From the IMG/VR virus record IMGVR_UViG_3300033049_000066, positions 229,279 through 293,278 of that record: 64,000 bases of DNA. One strand, written 5' to 3'. The notes under the pieces are model-generated. The model ran no database searches. It saw only the letters and a list, made by a program, of their open reading frames with translations, and was not told the origin of the DNA. Of the stretch, positions 3,047 to 60,246 are shown one piece after another. The position numbers and the translations under genes are program-made. How positions within the stretch are numbered: position 1 is the stretch's first letter; every line of letters starts with the position of its first letter.

Positions 3047-5017
3047 ATGGCTAAACGGAAAAAGAATTATTTAAATAACAAGGATATGCTCAAGGAAATT
3101 CACCTTAGCAAAATATCATATTGTGCGTTTACTGACAAGGTAGAGGACAATCAACAAGATTTCATCGTGGAAAGTGCTGACGCGATCTTCGGTACGCAGA
3201 ATGTAGAGGTTAAGAAAGAAACCGAAACCTCAGCTGCGGTTTTTGAAGACATCCCGGTAATACAGCTTGCGAGAAAAGCTAGGGCAGCGAGACTTACAAA
3301 ATTAGAAATTCCAACTGCGGTAGAAGATATAGTTGACACAGATATTGTATTTCGTGTAATGACGAACGAACACATTCCACGAGTCCCCAAGAAAAAATCC
3401 AAGGCACTACTAGCAAAAGAAGCAAAGCAAGCGAAATCCGACGCGATTTTTGACGAGCTTATGGATGGCGACGAGGATGGCGACGCTCCTACACCCACCG
3501 GGCCTGAGGTTATCTTGATCCCAATGCGTGTAAATTTTCCACCGTTTTTCCATTACCGGTTGACGGATGAACCGGGTGAACTAAAACTTGTCGGCAAATC
3601 CCACTGGCGTGGTGACTTAGAAACAGGCAGTTTCAACAAGACCAAGGGGCAAACTACAAACAATCTTGCTATGATGTACATCAAGCTCTGTGAGCGGTAC
3701 GGCACTAGAGGCAATTGGAGAGGGTATTGTGTAGATCAGGCCACAGAGGCTCTCACAGACCGTGGGTGGTTATTTGAAAATGAGATTACCGAAAATGATA
3801 AAATTTTATCATATAATGGCTCGACTATGGTTTGGTCTAACATTAATTCTATGTTTCGGGATAATTACAGTGGATTAATGCATAAACTTACATCTCGTAG
3901 CATCGATTCACTAATCACACCAAGTCATAAAATTGTAACCGATAAGGGGTTACTAAAGATTGAATATCTCAAAGAATCAGACCGGGTCGTTGTAATGGGT
4001 GATGCTGTGCCTACGGAGTTTGAGAAAACATACACAGATCAACTAGTTGAATTAGCTGGATGGATCATAACAGAAGGTAATTATCAACCCAAAAAGAAAA
4101 TTGTTACGATTTATCAAAACGAAGGTTCTTATGCCGACCGCATACGTAAATGTTTACATAACTTAAATTACTCGTTTTCTGAACGCAAATCTTCGAAATC
4201 CGAGAATATTTCATTTGCTATTAAGAGGAAGTACTGGGATGAAATCACAAATCTATTACCTAACAAAAATCTAACTATGGATTTTATTTTAAAACTTACG
4301 TATAATCAACGTGAATTATTAGTTAAAACAATGGTGGATGGTGATGGACACAGACACGGATTATTAATGCGATATACTCAGAAAAATAAAGAACACATGG
4401 ATCATTTTCAAACGTTATGTGCGCTAATTGGGTTAAAATCAAATGTTCATTATGTCGAGAATAAAATGTCATTCGGTAAGCCGGTTAACTATTATGTAAC
4501 AAATGTGTTTTCAAAACGAGGAAACTACACACGTGGATCGGCTATCGACATGCACGGTGGGAAAGACAATGGGAGTAGACACGTCGGCAAGGGGAAATTT
4601 TTCCACCCCAACAAGCCCACGGTGCAGTACGATGGTACGGTATGGTGCCCGGAGACTGACTACGGTTGCTTCTTAGCTAGGCGTAACGGAAAAGTATATT
4701 TGACCGGAAATACGTACAACGATGAAATGCAGGGGCAGGCTTTACTCCAGCTTTCGCAAATTGGACTTCAGTTCAATGAGCTAAAATCGCAGAATCCATT
4801 TGCGTACTACACTGCCGCGGTCACGAACAGTTTTACCCGGGTCTTAAACATTGAGAAAAAGATGCAAAATATCCGAGACGATATCCTCGAGTCAAATGGG
4901 CTCACTCCTAGCTGGACAAGGCAATACGCGAATGATGCGAAAAAGATGCCCCAGTATGATTACAATCTAAATGATCCCAGGAAGAAAAAGGCCAAAGAAG
5001 AGGAACCTAAAACTTAG
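3047..5017 (+). CDS. gp55: T4-like late sigma factor, intein-containing
   Basis: N-terminal NYLNNKDML. After intein removal the protein reads NWRGY|TYNDEM...QFNELKSQNPFAYYT...F.RVLNIEKK. It lies upstream of gp47/gp46 as in T4. Confidence 0.88.
   Translation: MAKRKKNYLNNKDMLKEIHLSKISYCAFTDKVEDNQQDFIVESADAIFGTQNVEVKKETETSAAVFEDIPVIQLARKARAARLTKLEIPTAVEDIVDTDIVFRVMTNEHIPRVPKKKSKALLAKEAKQAKSDAIFDELMDGDEDGDAPTPTGPEVILIPMRVNFPPFFHYRLTDEPGELKLVGKSHWRGDLETGSFNKTKGQTTNNLAMMYIKLCERYGTRGNWRGYCVDQATEALTDRGWLFENEITENDKILSYNGSTMVWSNINSMFRDNYSGLMHKLTSRSIDSLITPSHKIVTDKGLLKIEYLKESDRVVVMGDAVPTEFEKTYTDQLVELAGWIITEGNYQPKKKIVTIYQNEGSYADRIRKCLHNLNYSFSERKSSKSENISFAIKRKYWDEITNLLPNKNLTMDFILKLTYNQRELLVKTMVDGDGHRHGLLMRYTQKNKEHMDHFQTLCALIGLKSNVHYVENKMSFGKPVNYYVTNVFSKRGNYTRGSAIDMHGGKDNGSRHVGKGKFFHPNKPTVQYDGTVWCPETDYGCFLARRNGKVYLTGNTYNDEMQGQALLQLSQIGLQFNELKSQNPFAYYTAAVTNSFTRVLNIEKKMQNIRDDILESNGLTPSWTRQYANDAKKMPQYDYNLNDPRKKKAKEEEPKT
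3728..4711 (+). mobile_element. Intein (328 aa) with LAGLIDADG homing endonuclease in gp55
   Basis: Starts CVDQATEALTDRGW. Block B ITPSHK; endonuclease motifs LAGWIITEG and MVDGDG. Ends VWCPETDYGCFLARRNGKVYLTGN followed by T(+1). Confidence 0.92.
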
Positions 5018-24138: not shown

Positions 24139-24450
24139 ATGTCAGCAAGTAAAACTATTATTAAAGAACTCCGGAAAGAAATCAGGGAATTATCAAATAA
24201 ACTCGAGGATTCGGAGAAGCATTTAGTTAGGCAAAAGCGACATATTCAAAGAATGGAGACTGCACATCTCGTAAAACTGTCGGATCTAAATTCACGAACA
24301 AATATCATAGCAAGTCGCCTGCGTTATAACTTTTCAAAAGAACTGACTTGGATGGCACTAGTCGATGACGGAGAATCGGTCTTCAGGATAATTCAAGAGG
24401 TTATTACTCAGCTTCGCGATACAGCTCATCCAAGCCAAGTTAACAGATAG
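24139..24450 (+). CDS. Hypothetical coiled-coil protein
   Basis: ORF directly behind an early promoter and RBS. Confidence 0.7.
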   Translation: MSASKTIIKELRKEIRELSNKLEDSEKHLVRQKRHIQRMETAHLVKLSDLNSRTNIIASRLRYNFSKELTWMALVDDGESVFRIIQEVITQLRDTAHPSQVNR

Positions 24451-24456
24451 AATTCG

Positions 24457-24565
24457 AACAACAAACAACAAACAACAAACAACAACAAACAACAAACAAC
24501 AACAAACAACAAACAACAACAAACAACAACAAACAACAACAAACAACAACAAACAACAACAAACA
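24457..24565 (+). repeat. A/C-only simple repeat (AAACAAC and AAACAACAAC units)
   Basis: About 109 nt with no G or T, intergenic. Confidence 0.97.
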
Positions 24566-24571
24566 TATATT

Positions 24572-26464
24572 ATGAAGTCAATACCAAAGTTCGAAAACCT
24601 AAATAAAGGTGGGGTACCGCTCGGGACATTATCTGTCTTTTCGTCCGACACTATATCATCAAAACCTCTAAGTAGCAAAGATCTCGTATGGGATCGATTG
24701 CAAAACGGAATCACACCAAAACCGGACTGGTCAGCAATAAGTATGACCCAGGCAATGTCCCGATTAAATCAGGCAATGCGAAAAGCTAAACCCACAGTGG
24801 AATTTTTTGTCAAAAAATCGCGTGACTACGAGCAAAATGGGATTGCTGATGATTGAATGAACACAGATTACAAAAAGTTGGAATCACCATATCCGAGTAA
24901 ATACTATAACCATTGAATACGTAGAATAGAATTATGATATTACCAAAGAAATTGTTTGAGAAAATAGAATTTTTTGAACACTCAATTGACCAGAGCTGCG
25001 GCCCTGTTGAAGTCAGTGACAAATTTATCCTACATTTCAGGGACTGGTGGCGCCGGAAAAAAGTGATAAAAATTAATCGTATCATTGAACATTACAACGC
25101 AGATGACGGATCATTTGTTCATAGATCGACACCCGGCGCAGCAGATTTATATAACCAATTAAACGACTGGGCAATATCAACTTTTGAAGAAAAGCTTACT
25201 AGCATATCAAGAAAGTATAAAACTCACAACAATGATAATATAATTGAGTTGAATCCAAAACCGGCCAACTTAGATGATGAGTAAAAGACGTAAGCGTAGA
25301 CAGCGCGGTAAGCGCATCGAAGAGCGAAAACTAGCTCTTAAAGTTTGGGTGAGGCTACAACGGAGACAAGGCCCTTCGGAAATGCCACCAGCCCCGCACT
25401 GGCTTAGACATTTCTCGTCCGTAGCACAAGAGCTTCACACTCTTGTAGTCGATCAGAATTCGTTAGAATATGAAACCACAACACGGGAAATCGCATACCG
25501 ACGAAAGAAAGATACCGCCGCTAAAAAAAGAAGAAGAACATATATTAAAAACGTTTATCTAGCAAAACACAAGCCCGTAATAGAATGAAAGAATCCAAAA
25601 TACAGATAACCCAACGCAAGATACGCAATGCGGTCCGTCGCCACAAAGATCGTGAAGCTGCCGCAGTATGGAAAAAGCTCACAGCATCCGAACCCAGGTC
25701 AATTGAGCATTACTTTAGCGAATTTAATGCTGCGGTCAAGTTGTCTTACAAGACACAACGACAACATCGAGAAAATAACTTATTAAAAACTGCCACGGGC
25801 TTAACAGCTACGACAATATCAACAGATGAGGTCCAAGATGGAAAAAAGTGAGATAATCTACGAGAGCGTGTGCCGCGACGTGATTCAATGCGAGCACTAT
25901 ATCGCGTGGGAATTTTATTCCGAGACGAATGACGATGAACGGTACTACGAATCCAACCTCACCTGTCATTCGTGTCAGCTAGTAGGGCAATCGTACAACA
26001 TAACCGAGTACAATGAATTCTGCCCCAATCAGAAAATTCTCAACAAGTATCACGACCGCCGCGTGATTGAAATCATAGCCCACGAGAAAAAGTGCGCAGA
26101 AGAAAAAATGTGGAAAATACTAAATGAGTAAACTTAGCAAAACTCAAGCAAAAGTTTGGGATCGCTTGATAAATCAGCCAGTCCCACCACGACCAACGTA
26201 CCCAACCGCAGGTACCAAGTACCACAATACAAAAACCAACCGGCTGCACATCTACAATGGCAAACAATGGATAGAGATAACGTGAGTAAGAACCTTAGCA
26301 AAACTCAAGCAAAAGTTTGGGAGAGACTGAACGCCAAGCCCACCTCGCTCGCAGATAAAGAAATTGAGATGATCCGCCGCTACATAAAATCCGACGAAGT
26401 ATTACAGTCCGCGAAGATGACGCTAGACATAGAACTACTCCTGGCAGACCGAAACAAAAATTAA
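24572..26464 (+). CDS. Cluster of small hypothetical proteins (24572-24856, 24934-25284, 25274-25588, 25585-25851, ~25838-26131, 26124-26285, 26282-26464)
   Basis: Mostly coupled ORFs; six of seven carry a (V/M)WxxL motif. Confidence 0.7.
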
Positions 26465-26576
26465 GTACTAATTCAATTTTCTTCATAAATAAGACATACG
26501 CTAGAATAATCTAGTTTATGCGGATCCAACCGCGTAGCCCTTAGAACGGCAATTCTTAAACAAAGGAGAAATTCAA

Positions 26577-27128
26577 ATGGGACGACCAATCAACAAACGA
26601 TACTTGGGTGAGCCAACTGTCACAGGTAACGAAATTAAAGTACAATTTTTCAACGGCACAGCTTCAGTAAATGGCTGGATCGTCAAGCAGCTAGGCGCTA
26701 AAAAGTTTCGCTGCACAGATGGTACAGACACAGCAGATTGTCTGTTAGTTGACAAACTAGCAGCAGCTCTGATAGCTGGTGAAATGTCAATTAGTGTACG
26801 AGACGACAGCGCCGCAGTTAAGCAGATCGTTAAAATCGCTGGACGTAAAGTGACACTTGGGTCAGGCGAAAGCATTCCTTGGGACTTTAGCAGTTCAACA
26901 AGTGACGAACGTGTCGAAGTTGAAGAAGGTGGCGACCAATCAGCTCTGACAATTAGCATTCTTGACGCAACCGCTGGTGTAACGTACGCAATCGCAGTAC
27001 CAGGAACCACAGATTTCACACTACTTGGCGCAGCAGACAGCACAGCAGCAACCGAGTTTGAAATGAATGATGTTACTCCAGAAGGTACCGGAACTGTAAC
27101 AGCAGTCGAAGATACATTCGGTCTATAA
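26577..27128 (+). CDS. Virion structural protein
   Basis: MGRPINKRYLG...WIVKQ.G.KKF; late promoter, strong RBS and own terminator. Confidence 0.7.
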   Translation: MGRPINKRYLGEPTVTGNEIKVQFFNGTASVNGWIVKQLGAKKFRCTDGTDTADCLLVDKLAAALIAGEMSISVRDDSAAVKQIVKIAGRKVTLGSGESIPWDFSSSTSDERVEVEEGGDQSALTISILDATAGVTYAIAVPGTTDFTLLGAADSTAATEFEMNDVTPEGTGTVTAVEDTFGL

Positions 27129-27146
27129 TTTTTAATTAAGTTAGTT

Positions 27147-27170
27147 AAAAAACCCCATCTGGGGTTTTTT
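27147..27170 (+). terminator. Rho-independent terminator
   Basis: AAAAAACCCCA-TC-TGGGGTTTTTT. Confidence 0.8.
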
Positions 27171-27235
27171 AATGACCAAAAACTCTAATTAGGAATATTT
27201 AATTTGGATAAATAACAGTATATGGAGCATAACGA

Positions 27236-28372
27236 ATGAGTTTAAAAAAGCGATTTACAGGTGATCTAACCATCGAGTCAGTGGACTCTGGTAATACCTT
27301 TGTAATGAAAGAAGGTGGCGGAGTTAGCCTAACGGTCAGCACACCTGTTATAGCCGTTACGTCTATGGTTATCGGAACACAATACCGAATTATAACCTTA
27401 GGCACAACAGATTTCACGACACTTGGCTCTTCACTAGTTACCTCTGGTAGTTTTACTGTAGGTGAAGAATATATAATTTCCGTACCCGGGACAACGGATT
27501 TCACGCTCATCGGCGCAGCTGATAGCGTAGCTGGGACAGTGTTCACGGCGACCGGACCAGGCATTGGTGATGGCACCGCACTTGAGACAGTGTTCACAGC
27601 AACCGCAGTAGGAGCAGGCACAGGCACAGTTAAGTCAATTGTTGCAGTAGTTATAGATGGAGACTTAACAGTCCTTGGTACATCGACGTCAATCCAGTCA
27701 GTTAACACTGATATCGTCGACAATACAATAATATTGAACTCTGGAGAAACTGGACCTGGCGTATCCGCCGGTACCGCAGGCATAGAAATTGATCGAGGTG
27801 ATGGTATATCAGCAGGAGAAACCCCAGCTGGTTTGCGCTTTAACGAAGGATCAGACAGATGGGAACTAAATAATGGTGATGGAACCTGGGATGAAATTGA
27901 TTCCGGCGCAGCAGGATTTAATCTCGTTAGTGACTTATCACCCCAGCTTGGTGGCGACTTAGATGTCAACGGTTCTGCAATTACAAATGATAGCGGACCA
28001 GTAAACATTACAACAACTACGTCCGGCGATATAAATTTAACGTCAGTGGACGCGGCTGTAATAACAGGAACAACCGCAACGACAGTCACGTCACCGGGAC
28101 TAACAACATTGAGCTCGTCAGCTGCCGATATTGAAATTACCGCAGCAACCGAGCTTACATTCGCCGCTGGTACATTTTTAAAAGTTGATCACAACTTGTC
28201 GATGCTAATCGAGTCAATACCGGCAGTGAATCCAGGACTATTACCAAATTATAATACACTATCGGCAGGCGTAGTAGGCCCGGGCGGATCAGGATTATAT
28301 TTTGTAAATAATACAATAACAGACGAACTAGTTTCAAAGAAACGAGCTATAGCATATAGCATAATATTTTAA
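27236..28372 (+). CDS. Tail fibre/structural protein
   Basis: IDGDLTVLG, DNTIILNSGETG, AGIEIDRG and DLSPQLGGDLDVNG motifs; Thr/Gly-rich. Confidence 0.8.
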   Translation: MSLKKRFTGDLTIESVDSGNTFVMKEGGGVSLTVSTPVIAVTSMVIGTQYRIITLGTTDFTTLGSSLVTSGSFTVGEEYIISVPGTTDFTLIGAADSVAGTVFTATGPGIGDGTALETVFTATAVGAGTGTVKSIVAVVIDGDLTVLGTSTSIQSVNTDIVDNTIILNSGETGPGVSAGTAGIEIDRGDGISAGETPAGLRFNEGSDRWELNNGDGTWDEIDSGAAGFNLVSDLSPQLGGDLDVNGSAITNDSGPVNITTTTSGDINLTSVDAAVITGTTATTVTSPGLTTLSSSAADIEITAATELTFAAGTFLKVDHNLSMLIESIPAVNPGLLPNYNTLSAGVVGPGGSGLYFVNNTITDELVSKKRAIAYSIIF

Positions 28373-28383
28373 AGGGTTAATAC

Positions 28384-29004
28384 ATGGCAATTCAAACATC
28401 AACAGTCGGGCTAACAGTGTCGACAGTAACTTATACAAGCACAAATGAGACTGCAATAACGTTCATGTCTCTTTGTAATTTTAGCGGGGTACCAGTAACA
28501 GTTGATATTCACATTGTGCCATCTGGTGGGATTAGCAACAATGCGAATAAAATAATTAGCTCACTTGAGATTGCGTCCGACGACACCTATATTATGTATG
28601 AAGGCAATGAAAAATTAGTACTTGGGAATAGCGACGGAGTGGTGGTTGTGGCACCAGGTGCAATCGCTGACCCAATCGCAGTAACAGCAATATCCGCAAA
28701 CGGAGAGTACCAAATTGTGACACTTGGCTCCACAAATTACATTGCGATCGGAGCCACGCAGATTACTACAACTAATTTTGTCCCTGGGACCGTGTATATA
28801 ATTGACGCAGTAGGCGACACAGATTTCACACTTATTGGAGCCGGTAGCAACTCGGTTGGTGAAGTATTCACTGCGACAGGAATAGGCGATGGCACAACCG
28901 GCACCGCACTTGAAGCCGTGTTTACAGCAAGTGCGGCTGGCACAGGAACTGGCACAGTAAGAGCGGCACTGGTTACCGTAGTGACGAGTTACATAGAGGT
29001 TTAA
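28384..29004 (+). CDS. Tail fibre-associated structural protein
   Basis: AIT.MSLCN...EKLVL..D type beta-sandwich with an inserted repeat module. Confidence 0.7.
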   Translation: MAIQTSTVGLTVSTVTYTSTNETAITFMSLCNFSGVPVTVDIHIVPSGGISNNANKIISSLEIASDDTYIMYEGNEKLVLGNSDGVVVVAPGAIADPIAVTAISANGEYQIVTLGSTNYIAIGATQITTTNFVPGTVYIIDAVGDTDFTLIGAGSNSVGEVFTATGIGDGTTGTALEAVFTASAAGTGTGTVRAALVTVVTSYIEV

Positions 29005-29005
29005 C

Positions 29006-29383
29006 ATGGGATATTTTATTAAACAATCCGGTGATGTTACTTATAATCCAGGAACTAACAACATGGAATATAATAACGGCACGGATAATGTAGTAATTGC
29101 CAAAACTGGTGCAGTGCCGCCGGTGGTAGACACATTTCTGACCGCAGGTGCCAGCGCAGGCCCGTACTCAATCACTGTTGACTACACCACCGGCATCTAC
29201 GCAACCGATTCAAATAACCCAGCGTACATGCTTGTTTTTATTGACAGCGTGTACCAAGAACCGACAAATGCGTACACTGTAACCGGTAACACAATTACAT
29301 TTACATCGACTCCGTCAGATGGATTAACTGTTACAGTTTTACATGGAATGTATAGCACAGATGTTCCGAACGCAAATTTATAA
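29006..29383 (+). CDS. Structural protein
   Basis: VFIDSVYQEP..AYTV.G.TITFTSTP motif, typical of T4-like fibre/baseplate repeats. Confidence 0.7.
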   Translation: MGYFIKQSGDVTYNPGTNNMEYNNGTDNVVIAKTGAVPPVVDTFLTAGASAGPYSITVDYTTGIYATDSNNPAYMLVFIDSVYQEPTNAYTVTGNTITFTSTPSDGLTVTVLHGMYSTDVPNANL

Positions 29384-29400
29384 ATGAGGAATAACAAATA

Positions 29401-32022
29401 ATGGCCATTAATTACATCAAAGGTGAATCACTAGCTGCAAATTTATTGCGCGGTGGAGTTGACCTAGCTGTTGAAACAGATTTACTCTATGTTGATGTAG
29501 CCAACGGACGCATTGGTATACAAAATGCAACACCAGGAACAACACTTGACATCACAGGAACAGTATCTGCGATGGCAGTCGTAACACCGATTGTAACCGT
29601 CGGCAACGTTATTATTAGCAACAACAATATTACAACCTCCATAGATGACTTAACCCTTACTTCAGCAACCACAAATGTTTCCTTACTTGGTGACCTAACA
29701 TTTAACGCTCCAGTTAGCGACATAACTGGTCAAGGTGATCTAGATAATTTAAACAATCAATCCGCACTTACAATAGTCACAACACTAGTTGATACACCGT
29801 ATTACCTGGGCAACGCAAGAGATGCAGTGTCTATAGGCTCGGACAGCGTAATCGCCGCAGCTAGCAGCCTGTATCTCACCCCAGACGGCTTGACAATATT
29901 TTATGTTGACAACAGCGGTGCTGGTACAATCCCAGTGGATGTGTACCAATCAACACTTGGTGTAGCCTTTGATTTATCAACAGCTGGTGTACCATCATTT
30001 ACAACGATTACAGGCGGCGCAATAACAGAAGCTGCCCATGCCGTTACTTTTAATATAAACGGCTTGGAAATGTATATTTCAAAATATACAAACGCTGGCG
30101 TTGATACGATAGTAGAAAAATTTACCCTTAGCTTAGCATTTGATTTATCATCGACAGTGACTTACATAGGAAATATTGTGTTAGGCGCTGGTGATGCGTT
30201 TAACTTTGCGCCAACATATTCCGCAGATGGATTAAAAGCTTACAACGCAGCCATTGACACCGCCGGCATATTTATTAATGAATACGATCTTAGCCCAGCA
30301 TATGATTTAACAACCGCTGTTTTTAATGGCAACTTTGATATCTCAACTGAGATAGTTAACACCACAAATTACATTACGACAGCCATGTCAACAGATGGAT
30401 TTACTGTATTTGCAGCGCAATATGCGGCGACAAATAACGTACTAGTAAGCTATGCATTAGGCACCGCACTTGATATTACAACCGCAGTTGAGCTACAAAC
30501 AGTTACCCCAGCAACAACCGCCGAAGTACAAGGCATATGGTTCCCATCAGATGGATTTAATTTTTACTGGCTAGACGATGACGGTGTGCTACTTCAATTT
30601 GATAGTACAAACAAATCCCCAAACACGACATCCACGGCGCTTAATTTCAGCGGCGCAGGAAAACTTATTACAACGGATGACGGAGTACAGATAAGTGGGC
30701 AGCTAATTTTACCAGGATATGCTACTGCGAGTATACCAGCTACAACTATAGCAGGCGGTCTGATTTACGACACAGATACAAACTCATTGAAAGTTTACAA
30801 CGGCAATGACTGGACAGCAATTGCTGGAGGCGGCAGTGGTGGCGGCAGTGGTGGCGGTATGCAAGGATGGAATTTGTCCACCGCAACAAACGCATCAAAG
30901 TCATTTTCAGTAGCAGGTCAGTTAGGTGAACCCACAGATTTAGCTATAAGTGAAGACGGTACAAAAGTTTATATTACAGATTTTGATGGCGTAGCGCCAG
31001 GGGTGTATCAGTATAATTTGACCACAGCTTGGGATTTTAGCACCGCATCGTACTCGGGCAATTTCGCCTCGACAATCGGCAACGGGGATTTCCCACTGTC
31101 CATAGCGTTCAATCGCAGCGGAACAAAAATGTTCATCGGGTCTACGAATGAAGTACATCAGCACACTTTGTCCCCGGCATGGGAACTTAGCGGCGCGAAC
31201 CCGGATCTAATCTCGTACACAATCGGCGCAGGTGTCGCAGCATCTGCGATAGCGTTCAACCCAGCCGGCACGGTGTTGCTCGTGCTAGACGACACAACAC
31301 GGACCGTCACCCAACATACTATGACATTACCGTACGACGTGGAAAATGCGGTAGCATCAGGGCTAAGCGGAGATGTTTTTGGCACAGTTAATAGTGGAGC
31401 ACGTGGGCTTAGTCTTAGTCCAGATGGTTACAAGATGTACGTCTCAGATGGACCAAATGAAGAAGTATACGAGTACCAGCTCACCACAGCACACGATCCA
31501 TCCACCTTAGTCTACACCAATCGGGCCCTAAGCACCACGGCCATCGACGGAGACATAGGCGGGATATTTTTTAGATACGACGGAAACAGACTGTACATGG
31601 TAGGCACCACCACCGACGCAGCCTATCAGTTCGACTTAGCATGGCACGACGAATACAGCCTCGCCACACAAGATTACGTAGACACCACATCCGTTAGCAT
31701 CGCGGGTGATGCTATGACCGGTGCACTAACAACCACCGGTGGTGTTGACTCACTAACAACCGCAACGACCGTAGTAAACGTAGCCGCAGCAGCAGCGCCG
31801 ACAGTCGGTCAAGTACTTACAGCAACCTCGGACTCACTTGCGACATGGCAAGATGCAGCAGGCGGCGACCCAGCCTCAGAGACCGTATCTGGAACAATTG
31901 AAATAGCAACACAGATAGAAGTTGATACCGGCACTGATGCGGTCCGTGCGGTGACACCAGCAACGCTACAAAAGAAAGCCGAAGAAACAGCAATGATAAT
32001 GTCTGTAGTATTTGGGATATAA
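29401..32022 (+). CDS. Tail fibre / receptor-binding protein with beta-propeller-like repeats
   Basis: LYVDVANGRIGI; repeated DG.K.Y...Y.L..AWD.STA units; gp34-like ATQIEVDTGTD..RAVTP. Confidence 0.8.
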   Translation: MAINYIKGESLAANLLRGGVDLAVETDLLYVDVANGRIGIQNATPGTTLDITGTVSAMAVVTPIVTVGNVIISNNNITTSIDDLTLTSATTNVSLLGDLTFNAPVSDITGQGDLDNLNNQSALTIVTTLVDTPYYLGNARDAVSIGSDSVIAAASSLYLTPDGLTIFYVDNSGAGTIPVDVYQSTLGVAFDLSTAGVPSFTTITGGAITEAAHAVTFNINGLEMYISKYTNAGVDTIVEKFTLSLAFDLSSTVTYIGNIVLGAGDAFNFAPTYSADGLKAYNAAIDTAGIFINEYDLSPAYDLTTAVFNGNFDISTEIVNTTNYITTAMSTDGFTVFAAQYAATNNVLVSYALGTALDITTAVELQTVTPATTAEVQGIWFPSDGFNFYWLDDDGVLLQFDSTNKSPNTTSTALNFSGAGKLITTDDGVQISGQLILPGYATASIPATTIAGGLIYDTDTNSLKVYNGNDWTAIAGGGSGGGSGGGMQGWNLSTATNASKSFSVAGQLGEPTDLAISEDGTKVYITDFDGVAPGVYQYNLTTAWDFSTASYSGNFASTIGNGDFPLSIAFNRSGTKMFIGSTNEVHQHTLSPAWELSGANPDLISYTIGAGVAASAIAFNPAGTVLLVLDDTTRTVTQHTMTLPYDVENAVASGLSGDVFGTVNSGARGLSLSPDGYKMYVSDGPNEEVYEYQLTTAHDPSTLVYTNRALSTTAIDGDIGGIFFRYDGNRLYMVGTTTDAAYQFDLAWHDEYSLATQDYVDTTSVSIAGDAMTGALTTTGGVDSLTTATTVVNVAAAAAPTVGQVLTATSDSLATWQDAAGGDPASETVSGTIEIATQIEVDTGTDAVRAVTPATLQKKAEETAMIMSVVFGI

Positions 32023-35240: not shown

Positions 35241-36620
35241 TTAAAATATTAAATTCCAATCACCACCGCTGTAAACGCCCTCGTAACTTCTTGTCCAAGC
35301 CCCAATGGTGTATTTGAATTGTACACTTGTAGTTAAATTTGAAACGTACTGCGGTGTCGCACCGTCAGGATCGGCAACGTCATGTGCCTGGGCCGAGAAC
35401 GCAACAGACCACCCAGCGCCGTCGTACACAATAATATCATTCTCGTTAGCTACAACATCACCCCAGGCCGAAGCAAATACAGGATTCACCCCATCCCCGA
35501 TAGCGTCCGTAAGCAGGTAACGATCTCCTGTAGCAAGCCCTGTTAACGGCCCAGACTCAATTGGATTTATTACAGCAGTTACAGGATCAAGTGTATTCGT
35601 CGGTAGCGTATCAGTATCAACATTAAATAGTAGCAAGCTGGAATCTGATGGGTGATATGAAATTGTGCCAATGACGTCAGGGCGATCAGGAGCCTCCAGG
35701 CGAATCTGTGAAATGCCGCTGTTCAACGTGCCGTACTCATCTATCACAGCATGCCACGACAAATCATCCGCTTTAGGATCCGGAATCAATCCGATGTTGC
35801 CATCATCCCCGGGGACATTGCCATCTAAGATGCGTATCTGATTGCCCAGTAGCAAAATTTGATAACCATGCGGTGTGATTTTCAGCCTTGTTCCGAGAAG
35901 AATATCGTCACTGTCGATGGCATCAACGTACTGTCCAACGTCGTCGTAGATGCTAGCAATGACCTTGTGTATTACGCCTTCCTTGGTAACTCGAGCCGGC
36001 GGGCTAATCCATATCGGTAATGTAAATTTCAATGTAGCAATGTCGATCGCCCCATCATTATTTGGAATTGATCTTGACGACCAGTTCGTGTCGTCAATAT
36101 CAACGACACTGAGGCTAGTCCAATCAAGATAATTGTCGGTGCTCTGTATTTCAAATGACGGGTTAAAAAGTACTAAAATTTGTTCAAGTAATTGTAGCTT
36201 CATGTCGGTGCTAGAAGTCCACGCATCTAATTTGAGACTCAAACTGTACGGAACCGGCATCGGTCTCTCAATGTCAAAGGCATTGCCCTGGACCATTTCG
36301 AAAGTTTGTGTATCTTCATCCCAAGCTCGTTGTTTTACATTTTTTCTGTCAACGTGGTACGGTTCCTGCATTCGAGGCCGATCATATTTTAGCCCATCAA
36401 TATAAAAAGACATCAGCGGTGCACTCGGCATGCTGTTTGCTGAGGCATCCGCTAAGATAGTAGTAGCCTGTCGCGTCGCATCCCCGTATCGTATCGGAAC
36501 CCGCACTAGTACTGGTTGGTTGTTGCTGTCGAGCCCACCGACCACCTCGAAGTTGCTAAACATTCTAGCAAATTGTACTAAAAATCTTCGTATCTGCCCA
36601 TCGTAAAAATATGTACTCAT
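35241..36620 (-). CDS. gp15: Tail sheath stabilizer/terminator
   Basis: YFYDGQIRR, VPIRYG, PVPY.L, QLLEQILVLFNP. Confidence 0.88.
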   Translation of the reverse strand: MSTYFYDGQIRRFLVQFARMFSNFEVVGGLDSNNQPVLVRVPIRYGDATRQATTILADASANSMPSAPLMSFYIDGLKYDRPRMQEPYHVDRKNVKQRAWDEDTQTFEMVQGNAFDIERPMPVPYSLSLKLDAWTSSTDMKLQLLEQILVLFNPSFEIQSTDNYLDWTSLSVVDIDDTNWSSRSIPNNDGAIDIATLKFTLPIWISPPARVTKEGVIHKVIASIYDDVGQYVDAIDSDDILLGTRLKITPHGYQILLLGNQIRILDGNVPGDDGNIGLIPDPKADDLSWHAVIDEYGTLNSGISQIRLEAPDRPDVIGTISYHPSDSSLLLFNVDTDTLPTNTLDPVTAVINPIESGPLTGLATGDRYLLTDAIGDGVNPVFASAWGDVVANENDIIVYDGAGWSVAFSAQAHDVADPDGATPQYVSNLTTSVQFKYTIGAWTRSYEGVYSGGDWNLIF

Positions 36621-39902: not shown

Positions 39903-40256
39903 TCAATGACTTACTAGAGCAGCTCTCGGGGATTCCCCGATCACCTGCTTTCCGTGCCTGTACCACTCCTTCGTGCCATCAGCTAGTTCAACAGCCGGCC
40001 CGCCTATTCTGTGTAGTTTACCGTATCTGTACCACCACGTAGCACCATTTGTAAGTGCCATAGCCGGGCCGCCTATTCTGTGTAATTTTCCATTTTGGTA
40101 CCAAAATTTGTCACCATTTGCGTACTCGATAGCAGGCCCATCTTCTCTGTGTGATTTTCCATTTTGGTACCAAAATTTGTCACCATCTTTGTCAACACGA
40201 ATATCGTACTTTAAGCGATTGAATGTTTCTTGTGCTGTACCTTCAATCACGAGCAA
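39903..40256 (-). CDS. HREDGPA-repeat (MORN-variant-like) protein
   Basis: Repeats of WY.NGKLHR..GPA. Confidence 0.85.
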   Translation of the reverse strand: MLVIEGTAQETFNRLKYDIRVDKDGDKFWYQNGKSHREDGPAIEYANGDKFWYQNGKLHRIGGPAMALTNGATWWYRYGKLHRIGGPAVELADGTKEWYRHGKQVIGESPRAALVSH

Positions 40257-40943
40257 AATCCTTCATAGCTTCGTGATAATCACTAGCAAAATCCTTCATA
40301 GCTTCGTGATACGCATCTTCATCTTCGTAGCCACCATCAGCGTAGATTTTGTAAGCAGCGAAGTGAGCCTCAGCCTCTTCCACCACTCGCTTCATTTCCT
40401 CAATAGTAAAAGAAACAGTAACCTCTTCCCCGCAGTATCCACCCGGAACAGCCACCTCAATCTCACCGTAAGAATCCACCTCAACGTTAAACATCACCTT
40501 TCTGTTGTATTCTATCATGCTATCTCCTACAAAATGTCGTCTATTGCGCGTATCACTTCATCGTACGCAAATTCCTTGCCATCATCTACCGCACGTTCTT
40601 CGTCCGACCCGTACAAAAACTGATCGGTAACACGGTACCGAGCCTCTTCACACTCAGCTCGTAGTTTTAGCAAGTTTGCTTCAAAATACTCGGCTCTCGC
40701 TTTGTATACGCTAAATTCTTCCATTGTAAAAGTTGCTTTTGGCATAATATTCTCTTAAAAGTTGCGTACGAATTCAATTTCGCTAAGCTTGAATGTTTTG
40801 TAACAAAATGAGCCCTGAAACGGCATATTCATGTTGCTAACACGTACGGTACCTTTAACAATATCAGTATCCATTACACGTGCAAATTCGTTCATATGTC
40901 CTTTTTTAAACTTCTTAATGCGTACTATATCCATTATATCCAT
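40243..40943 (-). CDS. Three small early ORFs (40243-40518, 40527-40745, 40755-40943)
   Basis: Operon behind a promoter repeat, with RBSs. Confidence 0.7.
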
Positions 40944-47708: not shown

Positions 47709-50700
47709 ATGTTAGTATCACCAGGAGTTGAGGTCACAATTATAGACGAAAGTCAGTACACTTCAGCAGGACAAAATACAGTACCGTACATCTTGTTAGC
47801 TACAGCGGAAAATAAATTAACCCCAGCTGGCACAGGAATTGCATCGGGTACATTAGCATCGGCATTAGGCGATGTTTATTTAATTACAAGTCAACGCGAA
47901 CTTGTTAACACATTTGGTAATCCAAACTTTGTTAAAACATCCGGCGGTGACGCAATACACGGTTATGAACTAAACGAGTACGGCTTAATGGCTGCTTACT
48001 CCGTCTTAGGAGCAACTAACCGAGCATACGTCCAACGTGTTGATGTTGACCTAGCAGAAATTGAAGCTTCTGTAGTACGCCCAATAGGTGCGGCGAGCGA
48101 GGGTACATATTGGTTTGATTTAGCTGAATCAGTTTATGGTTTGTTTGTATGGAACGCGACCGCGAATACCTTTACAAACGTCGAGCCTCTTGTTATTACT
48201 GATAACGCTGACTTAGTCTCAGATGGTGGCGTGCCACTAGCAAGCATAGGAACAGTAGATTCATATGCGATTGTCACAACTGATTCAAATAATACAGTAT
48301 ACTGGAAGAACTATGCTAATGTATGGGTAGTTGTCGGATCCGACGCATGGAAATTAACTACTCCTGTTACTGTCGGAACCACAACTCCGTCAGCAGCAGT
48401 CACTGCCGGTGCGTTTGATGTTATTACAGTAACTACACCAGGCCCTACTACAATCACCGTAACTGGGCTTGCCTCATTTGCACTTCAAGTAGCTGAAATT
48501 GTTGGTCAATTACCGGCAGAAGTTTCTGCATTCATCAAAGATGGAGCAATAGCATTTGCAACTTCCGACGCAACGTTAGAAATTAATAACCCAACTACTA
48601 CAACACTAACCGAGCTTGGGATTACAGCCGCAGTTTACAACTCATCTACAATGGCACACGATACTCACATTAATGTACCACGTTGGAGAGCAACAGATAC
48701 AACGCCTCGCCCAACCGGTTCAATGTGGCAGAAGACAACTTCAGTCAATAATGGCTTATCGGTAGTTGTTAAACGTTATAATTCAGTTACTGCCACATTT
48801 GACGTACAGTCAGCACCTGCTTACCTTGACGACGTAGCGGCAAACGCTGCTCTAGACCCAGGCACAGGCGGATCTGCTATACCAAGCGGTGACACTTATG
48901 TACAGTACGATGTCAACGAAGATAATAGTGCTACACTGAAATTATTTAGACGCACTGGCGGCACAACTTCTGTTACTGGCACCAATGGCACAATTGCTTT
49001 ACCGTTAGTATTTGCGATAGGCGATGCTTTTACAATCCAAGCAAGCCTAAAAAATAATGATACATTGCCAGCAGCAGTAACAGTCACCTTAACAGGTACT
49101 ACAGCAGCAGATTTTGTAGCAGACTTAGCAGCAGCCGGCGTAACAAATGTCGCATCATCTGTTACAGCAACCGGTCGTATTACAATTGAACACACTGCCG
49201 GCGGCGTAATTGTACTTAATGATACAACTAATGCTCCGATAGCAAACATCGGTATTACTGATGCACTTGACAATGTTCGTTTAAATGCCGCAGGTGATTT
49301 AGTACTTAGTAACTGGAACTTCTTAACTTACACAGCAGAAGCCACAGTGCCTGGGCAAGATCCTTTGAACGACACACGCTGGTACTATTCAGCAATTGAT
49401 CAAATTGACATTATGATCCACGAAGGTGGCTCTTGGATCGGATATAAGAATGCTACTACCGACATACGTGGGCATGACTTATCCCTTACTAATCCAACCG
49501 GTCCGATTGTTAGTGCAACTGCCCCGGTTCTTCAAACAGATGATACAGATCTTGAACTTGGTGACTTGTGGCTTGATACAAGCGACTTGGAAAATTATCC
49601 AGTAATACGTCGTTGGGAAGCCGATGTAAACTCTGTAGAAAGTTGGACATTAATTGACAACGCTGATCAAACATCTACTAACGGCATATTATTTGAAGAT
49701 GCACGTTGGGGTTTAACTGGTGAAGAAGATATAGCAGCTGGCGATTTTATAGCAATTACTGATTTATTGCTTAGCAATCAGCTTGATCCAGATGCGCCAG
49801 ATTCAACACTATACCCAGATGGCATGTTACTTTGGAATACACGACGCAGCGGTTACAACGTTAAAGAATATCGCGTTAACTACTTCAACGGTACGGACTT
49901 CGATCTTTCGTCATTGCCTAACATTCATCCGAACGCTTGGGTTACAGTATCCGGCAAGAAAGATGACGGAAGCGCAAACTTTGGTCGACTAGCCCAACGT
50001 AGTTTGATAGTTGAAGCAATGAAAGCTGCGATCGATACAAACACAGACATCCGTGAAGAACAACGCCAATTCAACCTTATCGCAGTACCTGGATATCCAG
50101 AGCTAATACCGAACATGGTTGCGTTAAACAATGAACGTTCAAATACAGCATTTGTAGTCGGTGATTCACCACTGCGCCTAGCTAATAACGGAACAGACAT
50201 TGCTAAATGGGCATCTAACAACGACGGACTTGGTGTTTCGACCAATGACGGACTTGCAAGTAACGATGAGTATTTAGGTGTTTTCTATCCAAGTGGTAGA
50301 ACTAACGACTTAACTGGAACTTCAATTATTGTGCCTCCAAGTCACATGATACTTCGTACCATTATACACAGCGACGAACAAGCCTATCCGTGGCTCGCAC
50401 CAGCTGGAACACGCCGAGGTCAAGTTGACAACGCAGACGCAATTGGTTATGTTGACGCAGTTACTGGTGAATTCCAGCAGATGTCTACACGCCAAGGAGT
50501 ACGTGATGTGCTTTACACTAATAACGTAAATCCAATCACATTCATTCCAGGTTCAGGCATTGTTAACTTCGGTAACAAAACTACCAAGTCTGGTTCAGCA
50601 CTTGATCGTATTAATGTATCACGTTTAGTATCGTTTATTCGTGTACAAGCTGATGCAATTGCGAAACAATTTGTATTTGAACCTAACGACAAACTAACAC

Positions 50701-50918
50701 GTGATGAAATCAAAGGTCAGATGGAACGTATGCTAAATGATTTAGTTGCAAAACGTGGTGTATACGATTATATAGTAGTTTGTGATAAGAGTAACAATAC
50801 AAATACTCGCATTGATCGCAACGAACTTTGGGTTGACATAGCAATAGAGCCAGTCAAAGCTGCTGAATTTATTTACGTCCCAATTCGCATACAGAATACG
50901 GGCGACATTAGCGGTTAA
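47709..50918 (+). CDS. gp18: Tail sheath protein
   Basis: LVSPGVEV...DES, YPWLAPAG.RRG, VNPITF, SALDRINVSRL, IEPVKAAEFI. Confidence 0.97.
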   Translation: MLVSPGVEVTIIDESQYTSAGQNTVPYILLATAENKLTPAGTGIASGTLASALGDVYLITSQRELVNTFGNPNFVKTSGGDAIHGYELNEYGLMAAYSVLGATNRAYVQRVDVDLAEIEASVVRPIGAASEGTYWFDLAESVYGLFVWNATANTFTNVEPLVITDNADLVSDGGVPLASIGTVDSYAIVTTDSNNTVYWKNYANVWVVVGSDAWKLTTPVTVGTTTPSAAVTAGAFDVITVTTPGPTTITVTGLASFALQVAEIVGQLPAEVSAFIKDGAIAFATSDATLEINNPTTTTLTELGITAAVYNSSTMAHDTHINVPRWRATDTTPRPTGSMWQKTTSVNNGLSVVVKRYNSVTATFDVQSAPAYLDDVAANAALDPGTGGSAIPSGDTYVQYDVNEDNSATLKLFRRTGGTTSVTGTNGTIALPLVFAIGDAFTIQASLKNNDTLPAAVTVTLTGTTAADFVADLAAAGVTNVASSVTATGRITIEHTAGGVIVLNDTTNAPIANIGITDALDNVRLNAAGDLVLSNWNFLTYTAEATVPGQDPLNDTRWYYSAIDQIDIMIHEGGSWIGYKNATTDIRGHDLSLTNPTGPIVSATAPVLQTDDTDLELGDLWLDTSDLENYPVIRRWEADVNSVESWTLIDNADQTSTNGILFEDARWGLTGEEDIAAGDFIAITDLLLSNQLDPDAPDSTLYPDGMLLWNTRRSGYNVKEYRVNYFNGTDFDLSSLPNIHPNAWVTVSGKKDDGSANFGRLAQRSLIVEAMKAAIDTNTDIREEQRQFNLIAVPGYPELIPNMVALNNERSNTAFVVGDSPLRLANNGTDIAKWASNNDGLGVSTNDGLASNDEYLGVFYPSGRTNDLTGTSIIVPPSHMILRTIIHSDEQAYPWLAPAGTRRGQVDNADAIGYVDAVTGEFQQMSTRQGVRDVLYTNNVNPITFIPGSGIVNFGNKTTKSGSALDRINVSRLVSFIRVQADAIAKQFVFEPNDKLTRDEIKGQMERMLNDLVAKRGVYDYIVVCDKSNNTNTRIDRNELWVDIAIEPVKAAEFIYVPIRIQNTGDISG

Positions 50919-60183: not shown

Positions 60184-60246
60184 TGCGATGTTTTAATTTA
60201 CAGTCGTTTGATTTATATTAAAACTATTTCTAAGGTAAATACAACT

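What the first reader, a model, noticed from the sequence alone, without database searches (positions are those of the whole stretch)
26950..28960. Self-nested (matryoshka) ~50-aa module in three consecutive virion proteins
Seen: the module Y.I...GTTDFTLIGA.....G.VFTAT..G.GTG occurs once in the 26577 ORF. In the 27236 ORF (~27350-27631) and the 28384 ORF (~28672-28959) a full copy is inserted inside another copy, between its DF/NY..G and VFTA halves. Inference: a mobile surface-display domain that extends by loop insertion and spreads between genes.
Basis: partly seen in the sequence, partly recalled or inferred. Interest (0 to 1): 0.6.

Follow-up and report, generated by a model that had tools for sequence, protein, structure and literature searches.

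The report
Self-nesting mini-domain in phage tail proteins
Three neighbouring structural genes of an uncultured jumbo phage carry an unannotated 45-residue beta-domain, and in two of them one whole copy sits inside a loop of another copy, a recurring habit of this domain family that could let phages build loop-anchored projections of adjustable length.

Summary
A profile of 120 copies of the module reads the 27236 ORF as positions 1-26, then 1-45, then 30-45, and the 28384 ORF as 4-26, 1-45, 31-45. That is one complete copy set inside the loop of a split copy. The 26577 ORF has one copy. No shuffled flank reproduced the half-matches (0 of 500).

A syntenic relative has the same three genes, but the second and third lack the module. 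Other homologs carry one copy at the same sites.

The AlphaFold2 model of the 27236 protein is confident over the nest (pLDDT 93-97). The outer halves repeat the inner copy's strand pattern, and the inner copy alone overlays SH3-like barrels only weakly (Z 4.0). The model of the 28384 protein failed.

The module has no Pfam, PHROG or PDB match. It occurs in about 3,600 protein clusters, and its structural neighbours are almost all phage virion proteins.

Across the family it occurs singly, in tandem, or nested at two or three loops. Openers and closers match. One metagenomic protein has about 20 N-halves followed by about 20 C-halves.

Same-domain nesting is known from cyanobacterial RNA polymerase Si3 and myosin X, so this is a new variant. 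Function is inferred, and nothing indicates DNA-level mobility.

The parts
26577..27128 (+). p1, 183 aa. The host protein is about 125 aa and ends in an acidic tail. It carries one module near the C-terminus.
   Evidence: Of the listed homologs, 74 (130-169 aa) have no module, 39 (180-209 aa) have it, and 6 carry a PF16190-type domain at the same site.
26973..27107 (+). Single module of p1 (aa 133-177).
   Evidence: HMM match hmm 5-44, 35.5 bits, i-E 4e-10.
27236..28372 (+). p2, 378 aa, a tail-fibre-like protein. The nested double module sits between its N-terminal segment and the conserved 'GDLTV.G' body.
   Evidence: homologs with 0, 1 and 2 modules at this site. (likeness to tail-fibre proteins). 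(the syntenic ortholog of 219 aa has no module).
27359..27436 (+). p2 outer module, N-half (aa 42-67, hmm 1-26). The model also places a short strand at aa 38-40 that seems to belong to it.
   Evidence: 27.6 bits, i-E 1e-7. Strands 38-40 and 49-54 in the model.
27446..27580 (+). p2 inner module, complete and contiguous (aa 71-115, hmm 1-45). The compact unit in the model spans aa 65-118.
   Evidence: 73.4 bits. pLDDT 93-97. FeoA 3e19_A Z 4.0, rmsd 2.2 A, 47 residues aligned over model residues 65-118.
27584..27631 (+). p2 outer module, C-half (aa 117-132, hmm 30-45).
   Evidence: 15.2 bits, i-E 8e-4. Strands 119-121 and 131-134 have the same spacing as in the inner copy.
28384..29004 (+). p3, 206 aa. 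A small host domain of unknown function (phrog_20100) has the nest inserted before its last strand.
   Evidence: homologs of 157-177 aa have one module. (the syntenic ortholog of 105 aa has none).
28693..28761 (+). p3 outer module, N-half (aa 104-126, hmm 4-26).
   Evidence: 15.9 bits, i-E 5e-4.
28771..28908 (+). p3 inner module, complete (aa 130-175, hmm 1-45).
   Evidence: 58.8 bits, i-E 2e-17.
28915..28959 (+). p3 outer module, C-half (aa 178-192, hmm 31-45).
   Evidence: 13.4 bits, i-E 3e-3. 78% DNA identity over 59 nt to the p2 closer, including the junction (family D1).
28960..29001 (+). Last strand of the p3 host domain (aa 193-206), which resumes after the nest.
   Evidence: Aligns with the C-terminal strand of homologs carrying one module and of the module-less ortholog.

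Best explanation
The module is a small domain of about 45-50 residues, probably a beta-barrel, that folds on its own. Its two ends lie close together, so it can be spliced into a surface loop of a host protein without disturbing that protein.

At least two of its own loops accept another copy: the 'ADS.VG' loop before the FTAT strand, and the 'G.G.G' hairpin before the last strand. In p2 and p3 a complete copy sits in the first of these loops of a second copy, and that second copy sits in a loop of the host protein. This makes three levels.

The chain runs out through the N-halves and back through the C-halves. A nested array therefore starts and ends at the same point and projects from the host like a stalk. 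Nesting depth would set its length, and the innermost copy would sit at the tip.

Shown here: the sequence anatomy, the homolog series with 0, 1 and 2 copies, the family-wide matching of openers and closers, and a confident model for p2.

Inferred: that the outer halves really fold into one domain, that deep nests form rods, and that the projection acts as a spacer or weak adhesin on the virion, for example by binding a host-surface polysaccharide.
For: 1. Anatomy. The inner copy is contiguous and has the canonical loop. The flanking pieces are hmm 1-26 plus 30-45 in p2 and 4-26 plus 31-45 in p3, which adds up to one module.

2. Complementarity across the family. In 29 nests of this type from many proteins, the two outer pieces together cover on average 44.2 of 45 profile positions. 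The end of the N-half correlates with the start of the C-half (r = 0.60).

3. Openers predict closers. Among 413 full modules in proteins that are no more than 50% identical to each other, 15 of 23 preceded by an N-half are followed by a C-half, against 8 of 390 of the rest (odds ratio 90, p = 2e-16). The second insertion site gives an odds ratio of 27 and p = 2e-7.

4. Deferred last strands match in number. P0024 has three modules followed by three 'G.GTA' strands, and P0064, P0032 and P0257 have four and four. P0183 has about 20 N-halves followed by about 20 C-halves.

5. Homolog series at fixed host sites.
- p2 family: 0 copies (P0007-9), 1 (P0010), 2 nested (p2, P0001-5).
- p3 family: 0 (L011 ortholog), 1 (the 157-aa group), 2 nested (p3, P0122).
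- p1 family: 0, 1, or a different small domain.
- A syntenic contig has p1 with the module, and p2 and p3 without it.

6. Structure. In the AlphaFold2 model of p2, residues 40-135 have pLDDT 93-97. The outer strands (38-40, 49-54 ... 119-121, 131-134) repeat the spacing of the inner strands (67-69, 78-83, 102-104, 114-117). The contiguous stretch 65-118 overlays whole SH3-like domains: FeoA Z 4.0, rmsd 2.2 A over 47 residues, and IdeR Z 3.8.

7. Split-chain test (ESMFold2). Residues 36-116 were folded against residues 117-150. The verdict was weak support: score 0.46, best of 3 controls 0.00. The mark was reached by 58 of 80 solved complexes and 2 of 110 mismatched pairs. At 0.60 or under, only 7 of those 80 solved complexes reached it, and both mismatches that passed were in that range. 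The runs agree in at least 94% of contacts and the partner's pLDDT is at least 62. My own alignment was used, so these counts hold only roughly.

8. Virion context. Atlas structural neighbours are 96-100% Uroviricota and include tailspike, baseplate, adaptor, sheath-completion and distal-tail proteins. BFVD and tblastn link p2 to tail-fibre proteins.
Against: - No coordinates were available, so I could not read strand pairing in the model. The nest in 3D is inferred from secondary structure, confidence and one aligned range.
- The SH3-like match is weak (Z 4.0, where a best Z of 7-8 is common for unrelated models).
- The p3 model failed (mean pLDDT 41), so p3 rests on sequence alone.
- The split-chain test gave only weak support.
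- About a third of N-halves have no detected closer. This may be a detection failure, or these may be truly incomplete copies.
- Nothing here bears on function. The most conserved residues are Gly, Thr and hydrophobic, as expected for a fold rather than a binding site.
- Presence in the virion is not shown for p1 or p3.
Confidence: 0.7

Rival explanations
1. Simple tandem or partial duplication. Unequal crossing-over duplicated first the N-part and then the C-part (A-A-BC-BC). The extra halves are unfolded linker with no partner.
For: True tandem arrays of the same module exist in relatives (FF, FFF and up to FFFFFF). Some N-halves have no detected closer.
Against: - The leftover pieces add up to exactly one module.
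- They are conserved in orthologs P0001-5 and P0122.
- Openers and closers are strongly associated.
- The whole stretch is modelled at pLDDT 93-97, with the outer halves in strands.
- Two independent duplications with matching breakpoints in many unrelated proteins are less parsimonious than one insertion.
Confidence: 0.08
2. Domain-swapped or permuted pairing. The first N-half folds with the first C-half and the second N-half with the second C-half, giving two intertwined domains rather than a nest. Alternatively, the unit is a circular permutant.
For: All four pieces are alike, so sequence alone cannot exclude other pairings. I could not inspect contacts in the model.
Against: - The second N-half and the first C-half are joined by the canonical loop and together make a full-scoring contiguous module (73 and 59 bits).
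- Residues 65-118 overlay a whole single SH3-like domain as one contiguous range.
- In deep nests such as P0183, only antiparallel out-and-back pairing is sterically possible, because the last N-half is followed at once by the first C-half.
- No rotated order (BC before A) is seen in p2 or p3.
Confidence: 0.07
3. Not globular modules at all. The Gly/Thr-rich repeats form a continuous fibrous beta-structure (a beta-helix or beta-sheet ribbon), and the 'halves' are merely two repeat types of a fibre.
For: The composition is Gly/Thr-rich and the host proteins are fibre-like. In P0183, runs of about 20 N-type repeats and about 20 C-type repeats could each form a separate repetitive structure.
Against: - Single copies occur alone inside loops of compact host proteins (P0010, the 157-aa p3 homologs, p1). 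This requires an autonomous fold with adjacent ends.
- The model shows a compact unit that matches small barrels.
- The numbers of N- and C-type elements match.
Confidence: 0.1
4. An actively mobile DNA cassette: the module copies itself between genes as a genetic element.
For: - The module is in six ORFs of one genome and in many unrelated virion protein families.
- The p2 and p3 closers share 78% DNA identity over 59 nt, including an identical 14-nt junction.
Against: - Copies in the genome are 49-76% identical in DNA. The two nests are 59% identical overall.
- No flanking direct repeats were found.
- Outer copies are no closer to their own inner copy (55%) than to copies in other proteins (52-53%).
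- This pattern fits old domain shuffling by recombination, not recent transposition.
Confidence: 0.05

Closest known systems
Si3 insertion of cyanobacterial RNA polymerase beta' (nested sandwich-barrel hybrid motifs, SBHM/HABAS)
   Same: Copies of one small beta-domain are inserted into one another. Several copies are therefore built from distant parts of the chain. The whole array sits in a loop of a host protein and forms an elongated projection of 150 A. Nesting of five to six levels has been described (PMC10895346, PMC13114784).
   Different: - A different domain: SBHM is about 70-80 aa, while this module is about 45 aa and looks weakly SH3-like.
- A different host: a cellular enzyme against phage virion proteins.
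- Si3 is one lineage-specific array in one protein. Here the nesting recurs in many unrelated proteins, at two or three defined loops, with apparent depth of up to about 18.
Myosin X PH1N-PH2-PH1C split PH domain
   Same: One domain is split by a copy of the same domain inserted in a loop (A1-B-A2). The two form a rigid supramodule (PMC3216653).
   Different: It is eukaryotic, has a single level and occurs in one protein family. Its function is known (cooperative lipid binding). Recursion and variation in copy number are absent.
SH3-like small barrels (FeoA, C-terminal domain of DtxR/IdeR)
   Same: These are the best structural matches to the inner copy: 3e19_A Z 4.0, rmsd 2.2 A, 47 residues; 4o6j_A Z 3.8. 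Size and strand count are similar.
   Different: There is no sequence relation (no Pfam hit, no PDB sequence hit). The Z-score is in the range of common arrangements. The module is about 25 residues shorter than FeoA.
Accessory decoration domains of phage virion proteins (Ig-like, FN3, BACON and similar; from my own knowledge of the field)
   Same: These are small beta-domains added to many different structural proteins, present or absent among close relatives. They are thought to mediate weak adhesion to surfaces or to act as spacers.
   Different: Those domains are known as terminal or tandem additions. Systematic self-nesting is not a described feature. No Pfam family of that kind matches here.
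PF16190 (E1_FCCH-type) small domain found in some p1 homologs
   Same: It occupies exactly the same site in the p1 family (between 'EEAG' and the acidic tail) as the module does in p1. It shares a short local motif, Y.V....T.FTI.
   Different: The profile-profile comparison gives 11% probability over 16 columns, so homology has no support.

Membership tests
Homotypic nested domain insertion (A1-B-A2 of one domain family) | A complete, contiguous inner copy | tested here: met
   hmm 1-45 at p2 aa 71-115 (73.4 bits) and at p3 aa 130-175 (58.8 bits).
Homotypic nested domain insertion (A1-B-A2 of one domain family) | The flanking pieces are complementary parts of one further copy | tested here: met
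   p2 has hmm 1-26 plus 30-45, and p3 has 4-26 plus 31-45. In 29 nests the outer pieces cover a mean of 44.2 of 45 positions.
Homotypic nested domain insertion (A1-B-A2 of one domain family) | The outer pieces fold together into the same fold in 3D | tested here: inconclusive
   - The p2 model has pLDDT 93-97, and the outer strands repeat the inner pattern.
- The split-chain test gave weak support: 0.46 against a best control of 0.00. The mark was reached by 58 of 80 solved complexes and 2 of 110 mismatched pairs. At 0.60 or under, only 7 of the 80 reached it, and both mismatches that passed were in that range.
- No coordinates were available to read contacts.
- The p3 model failed.
Homotypic nested domain insertion (A1-B-A2 of one domain family) | Relatives without the insert exist at the same site | tested here: met
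   Series with 0, 1 and 2 copies exist in the p2 and p3 families.
Simple tandem repeat | Head-to-tail copies, each running from profile start to profile end | tested here: not met
   The order in p2 and p3 is N-half, full copy, C-half. True tandems do occur in other family members.
Circular permutation | Rotated order of elements within one copy (C-part before N-part) | tested here: not met
   No C-part precedes an N-part in p1, p2 or p3.
SH3-like barrel superfold (FeoA/DtxR-C type) | Structural superposition on a five-stranded small barrel with a convincing score | tested here: inconclusive
   Best Z is 4.0, rmsd 2.2 A, 47 residues. Foldseek against the PDB found nothing at E <= 0.001.
SH3-like barrel superfold (FeoA/DtxR-C type) | Sequence-profile membership in a known SH3-like family | tested here: not met
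   No Pfam family at E <= 1 for p1-p3 or for six multi-module relatives. The best PDB sequence E-value is 0.42.
PF16190 E1_FCCH-type domain | Profile-profile similarity | tested here: not met
   hhalign probability 11%, 16 columns.
Mobile genetic element (self-copying DNA cassette) | Near-identical DNA copies at several loci | tested here: not met
   49-76% nucleotide identity between copies within the genome.
Mobile genetic element (self-copying DNA cassette) | Flanking target-site or terminal repeats, or an associated enzyme | tested here: not met
   No flanking direct repeats in 26900-29050. I did not search systematically for an associated enzyme.
Virion structural protein | Detected in particles, or homologous to a protein so detected | tested here: inconclusive
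   - Part of p2 matches annotated tail-fibre proteins and sits in the syntenic position in PA5oct-like phages.
- The module occurs in a 'virion structural protein' of cyanophage S-TIM54.
- p1 and p3 have no annotated relatives.

The most novel reading that the evidence does not exclude
This is an undescribed mini-domain family, largely restricted to tailed phages, whose normal way of growing is recursive insertion into its own loops. The result would be out-and-back strings of split domains, two deep in this window and apparently about 18 deep in one metagenomic protein. These would form rods that begin and end at the same loop of a virion protein. That would be a new way of building fibres or antennae of adjustable length, distinct from trimeric coiled or beta-helical fibres and from tandem Ig-like arrays.
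Probability: 0.45. Interest if true: 0.78.

Novelty: new variant of a known kind. Interest (0 to 1): 0.62.

Why it matters
For protein evolution:
- Self-nesting of a domain is known from very few cases.
- This family nests at defined loops in many unrelated proteins and at depths from 1 to about 18. That makes it a natural series for asking how a chain folds when every domain but the innermost is split.
- The series also gives a template for designing loop-anchored projections.

For phage biology:
- It names an unannotated module present in about 3,600 protein clusters, mostly from marine and other environmental viromes.
- It explains length differences among orthologous tail proteins.
- It points to a candidate for host-surface contact that can be tested by deletion and binding assays.

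Tried and rejected
- **blastn against phage records.** The region found nothing among 50,697 records. tblastn of the nest found only two records, a 'virion structural protein' of S-TIM54 and a 'b-glycanase' of an uncultured podovirus.
- **Pfam and PHROGs.** Neither has a hit on the module. The best PDB sequence match has E = 0.42.
- **Foldseek against the PDB.** The whole p2 model gave nothing at E <= 0.001.
- **AlphaFold2 of p3.** With the clean 9-row alignment A2 it failed (mean pLDDT 41). It neither supports nor contradicts the nest in p3.
- **Adding nest fragments to the p3 alignment.** MAFFT then misaligned the host strands of the 157-aa homologs onto the outer N-half (A3 and A7). I did not use those alignments for folding.
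- **Homology to the PF16190-type insert of p1 homologs.** hhalign gave 11% probability, so I rejected it.
- **Bracket parse with separate half-profiles.** It was too insensitive for short closers and split the clusters. I replaced it with coordinates from the full profile and 2x2 tests.
- **First regex parse.** It over-called the FTAT strand, because the start of each module ('SFVVG', 'VTAG') resembles it.
- **Origin of the nests.** Outer copies are 55% identical to their own inner copy and 52-53% to copies elsewhere. Local duplication and import of a ready-made double unit therefore cannot be told apart. The 78% identity over 59 nt between the p2 and p3 closers is only suggestive, since the two nests are 59% identical overall.
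- **ESM Atlas feature search.** Best score 0.79, below the level of a usable lead.
Full report
**Context**

The window is the last 64 kb of a 293 kb linear IMG/VR virus record. It encodes a portal, a T4-type major head protein, tail sheath proteins and a late sigma factor. The head protein is 65-66% identical to those of jumbo myophages such as Pseudomonas phage PA5oct and Vibrio phage 2.275.O. The finding lies about 5 kb downstream of the head gene. It sits just upstream of two ORFs with tail-fibre profile matches (29006-29383 and 29401-32022).

**The observation**

The three ORFs are as described. I built a profile from 120 non-redundant copies of the module taken from this genome and from database relatives. 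The consensus is 45 residues: h.hG..Y.I...G.TDFT.IGA.....G..FTATG.G.GTGTA.

Against all six-frame ORFs of the genome the profile gives:
- p1: one copy at aa 133-175.
- p2: profile positions 1-26 (aa 42-67), then 1-45 (aa 71-115), then 30-45 (aa 117-132).
- p3: positions 4-26 (aa 104-126), then 1-45 (aa 130-175), then 31-45 (aa 178-192).

The partial matches are individually significant (i-E 1e-7, 8e-4, 5e-4 and 3e-3). None of 500 composition-preserving shuffles of the flanks gave a half-match of 13 bits or more on either side.

The same module occurs in three further ORFs of the genome. These are a 702-aa ORF with a single copy and a third nest, a 366-aa ORF with two copies, and a 4,405-aa ORF with one copy.

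**Nest, tandem repeat or permutation**

The inner copy is contiguous, scores as a full module and keeps the canonical loop between its N-part and C-part. What is left on either side adds up to one more module. This holds generally:
- In 29 nests of this type, from proteins of many different families, the two outer pieces cover on average 44.2 of 45 profile positions. The point where the N-half stops correlates with the point where the C-half resumes (r = 0.60).
- Among 413 full modules in a sample of proteins no more than 50% identical to one another, 15 of the 23 preceded by an N-half are followed by a C-half. Only 8 of the other 390 are (odds ratio 90, p = 2e-16). These tests treat modules as independent, which they are only roughly.

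A simple tandem would read 1-45, 1-45. Such arrays exist in relatives but not in p2 or p3. A circular permutant would put a C-part first, and none does.

**A second and a third insertion site**

- In other family members the next copy is inserted one loop later, in the hairpin before the last strand. The last strands are then deferred and pile up at the end in matching number. There are three modules and three 'G.GTA' strands in P0024, and four and four in P0064, P0032 and P0257. The opener-closer association for this site has an odds ratio of 27 (p = 2e-7).
- A few nests break at the turn before 'TDF'.
- The extreme case is P0183, a 4,359-aa metagenomic protein. Between about residues 1569 and 2540 it has about 20 N-halves in a row, two of them completed on the spot. 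These are followed by one closing C-part and about 20 further C-halves. The counts are 19 and 15 by a sensitive profile scan and about 20 and 21 by eye.
- Because the last N-half is followed at once by the first C-half, only out-and-back pairing is sterically possible. That pairing is a nest.

**Homologs without the insert**

- *p2 family.* Proteins of about 210-230 aa have no module. P0010 has one. p2 and P0001-5 have the nest. All are at the same point, between the N-terminal segment and the conserved 'GDLTV.G' body.
- *p3 family.* Proteins of 157-177 aa have one module inserted before the last strand of the host domain. p3 and P0122 have the nest there.
- *p1 family.* Of the listed homologs, 74 lack the module, 39 have it and 6 carry an unrelated small domain (PF16190 type) at the same site.
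- *Syntenic contig.* A 100.8 kb metagenomic contig carries the same gene order. Its p1 ortholog has the module (74% identity). Its p2 ortholog is 219 aa and its p3 ortholog 105 aa, both without any module.

The module is therefore an accessory insert. In p2 and p3 the architecture has three levels: host, outer copy, inner copy.

**Structure**

- *p2 model.* An AlphaFold2 model of p2 was made with a checked 36-row alignment. Its mean pLDDT is 71, but residues 40-135 reach 93-97.
- *Strand pattern.* DSSP strands of the inner copy lie at 67-69, 78-83, 102-104 and 114-117. Those of the outer copy lie at 38-40, 49-54, 119-121 and 131-134. The spacings within each half are the same.
- *Fold search.* An exhaustive structural search gave as best matches whole SH3-like domains aligned to the contiguous range 65-118. 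These were FeoA 3e19_A (Z 4.0, rmsd 2.2 A, 47 residues) and the IdeR C-domain (Z 3.8). That fits an inner copy which is a compact unit on its own, and it argues against swapped pairing. Scores of this size show no more than a common small-barrel arrangement.
- *Split-chain test.* Residues 36-116 were folded against residues 117-150. The verdict was weak support: score 0.46, best of three controls 0.00. The mark was reached by 58 of 80 solved complexes and 2 of 110 mismatched pairs. At 0.60 or under, only 7 of those 80 reached it, and both mismatches that passed were in that range. The runs agree in at least 94% of contacts and the partner's pLDDT is at least 62. My own alignment was used, so these counts hold only roughly.
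- *Limits.* The p3 model failed (mean pLDDT 41). I had no access to coordinates, so the pairing of the outer halves is inferred, not seen.

**What the module is**

- It has no Pfam, PHROG or PDB sequence match.
- A profile search of 1.84 billion cluster representatives found 3,593 proteins at E <= 0.001 and 1,805 at E <= 1e-10. Some have up to 28 matched stretches. I ran this costly search because the family scans left the protein open.
- Only two of 50,697 deposited phage genomes show the module by tblastn.
- Structural neighbours in the ESM Atlas are 96-100% viral. They include proteins with pectate-lyase, baseplate-wedge, SU10-adaptor, T4 gp15, tail-L, Phage-tail_3 and pb9-type domains. Word-search hits add Mtd_N and Phage_stabilise domains.
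- The part of p2 after the nest resembles the N-terminal part of annotated tail-fibre proteins of Synechococcus phages. It also resembles a 'long tail fiber protein' that lies a few kb downstream of the head gene in PA5oct-like phages.

**How it probably works**

A domain whose ends meet can be dropped into a loop. If its own loops tolerate the same operation, repeating it gives a string of domains in which the chain goes out and comes back. The whole array then still begins and ends at one point. This suits insertion into compact host proteins, where a tandem array would pull the two host segments apart. Array length would follow from depth.

I infer that the arrays project from the tail or another virion surface and act as spacers or weak adhesins. 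I rate the architecture at about 0.7-0.8 and the function at about one in three.

**Mobility**

- Copies within the genome are 49-76% identical in DNA.
- The p2 and p3 nests are 59% identical overall, 70% in the closer.
- There are no flanking repeats.
- Outer copies are no closer to their own inner copy than to copies elsewhere.

This fits old domain shuffling, not an active element.

**Comparison with known systems**

Same-domain nesting is established in two systems:
- The Si3 insertion of cyanobacterial RNA polymerase. Several sandwich-barrel hybrid motifs there are built from distant chain segments, and the array forms a 150 A projection from the trigger loop (PMC10895346). A 2026 survey counts up to six levels (PMC13114784).
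- Myosin X, with its PH1N-PH2-PH1C arrangement (PMC3216653).

The present case shares the principle. It differs in the domain, in the setting (phage virion proteins), in recurring across many unrelated hosts at defined loops, and in apparent depth. I therefore rate it a new variant of a known kind.

Noticed in passing
P0183 (metagenomic protein of 4,359 aa), residues about 1569-2540: About 20 N-halves of the module in a row are followed by about 20 C-halves. If the halves pair, this is an apparent nest about 18 deep.
   Followed up: partly
window 3047-5017 (+): A 656-aa ORF matches a late-transcription sigma factor profile at aa 3-228 and another at aa 555-650. A PhoH-like ATPase profile matches in between, at aa 228-559. 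This may be another domain insertion, or a fusion, in a gp55-like sigma factor.
   Followed up: no
window 24457-24565: A microsatellite (AACAACAAAC)n of about 11 copies lies between ORFs 24139-24450 and 24572-24856.
   Followed up: no
window 61395-61877: A 246-nt unit is repeated twice in tandem (90% match) inside the 863-aa ORF 60208-62799.
   Followed up: no
window 63876-63994: A perfect 18-nt repeat, 6.6 copies, lies inside the ORF that runs off the window end (63058-63999).
   Followed up: no
window 39993-40175: A 69-nt repeat, 2.7 copies (77% match), lies at the start of ORF 39973-40623.
   Followed up: no
window 27199-28089 (-) and 26573-27043 (-): Long antisense ORFs (296 and 156 aa) overlap p2 and p1. 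They are probably shadows of the Gly/Thr-rich coding strand, since the sense ORFs have many conserved homologs.
   Followed up: partly
P0393, P0396, P0417, P0418, P0422, P0425 (p1 homologs): The site that holds the module in p1 holds a PF16190 (E1_FCCH-type) small domain in these homologs. The site behaves like a slot for exchangeable small domains.
   Followed up: partly
window 26124-26464: Two overlapping ORFs in different frames (26124-26285 and 26156-26464) both encode the motif LSKTQAKVW(D/E)RL. This may be a local duplication or a frameshift.
   Followed up: no
window 35241-36620 (-) and 47709-50918 (+): Two different ORFs match tail-sheath profiles: 458 aa (phrog_11196) and 1,069 aa (phrog_10581).
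   Followed up: no
P0288 at about residue 831 and P0105 at about residue 107: In these nests the outer copy breaks at profile position 16/17, the turn before 'TDF'. This is a third insertion site in the module.
   Followed up: no
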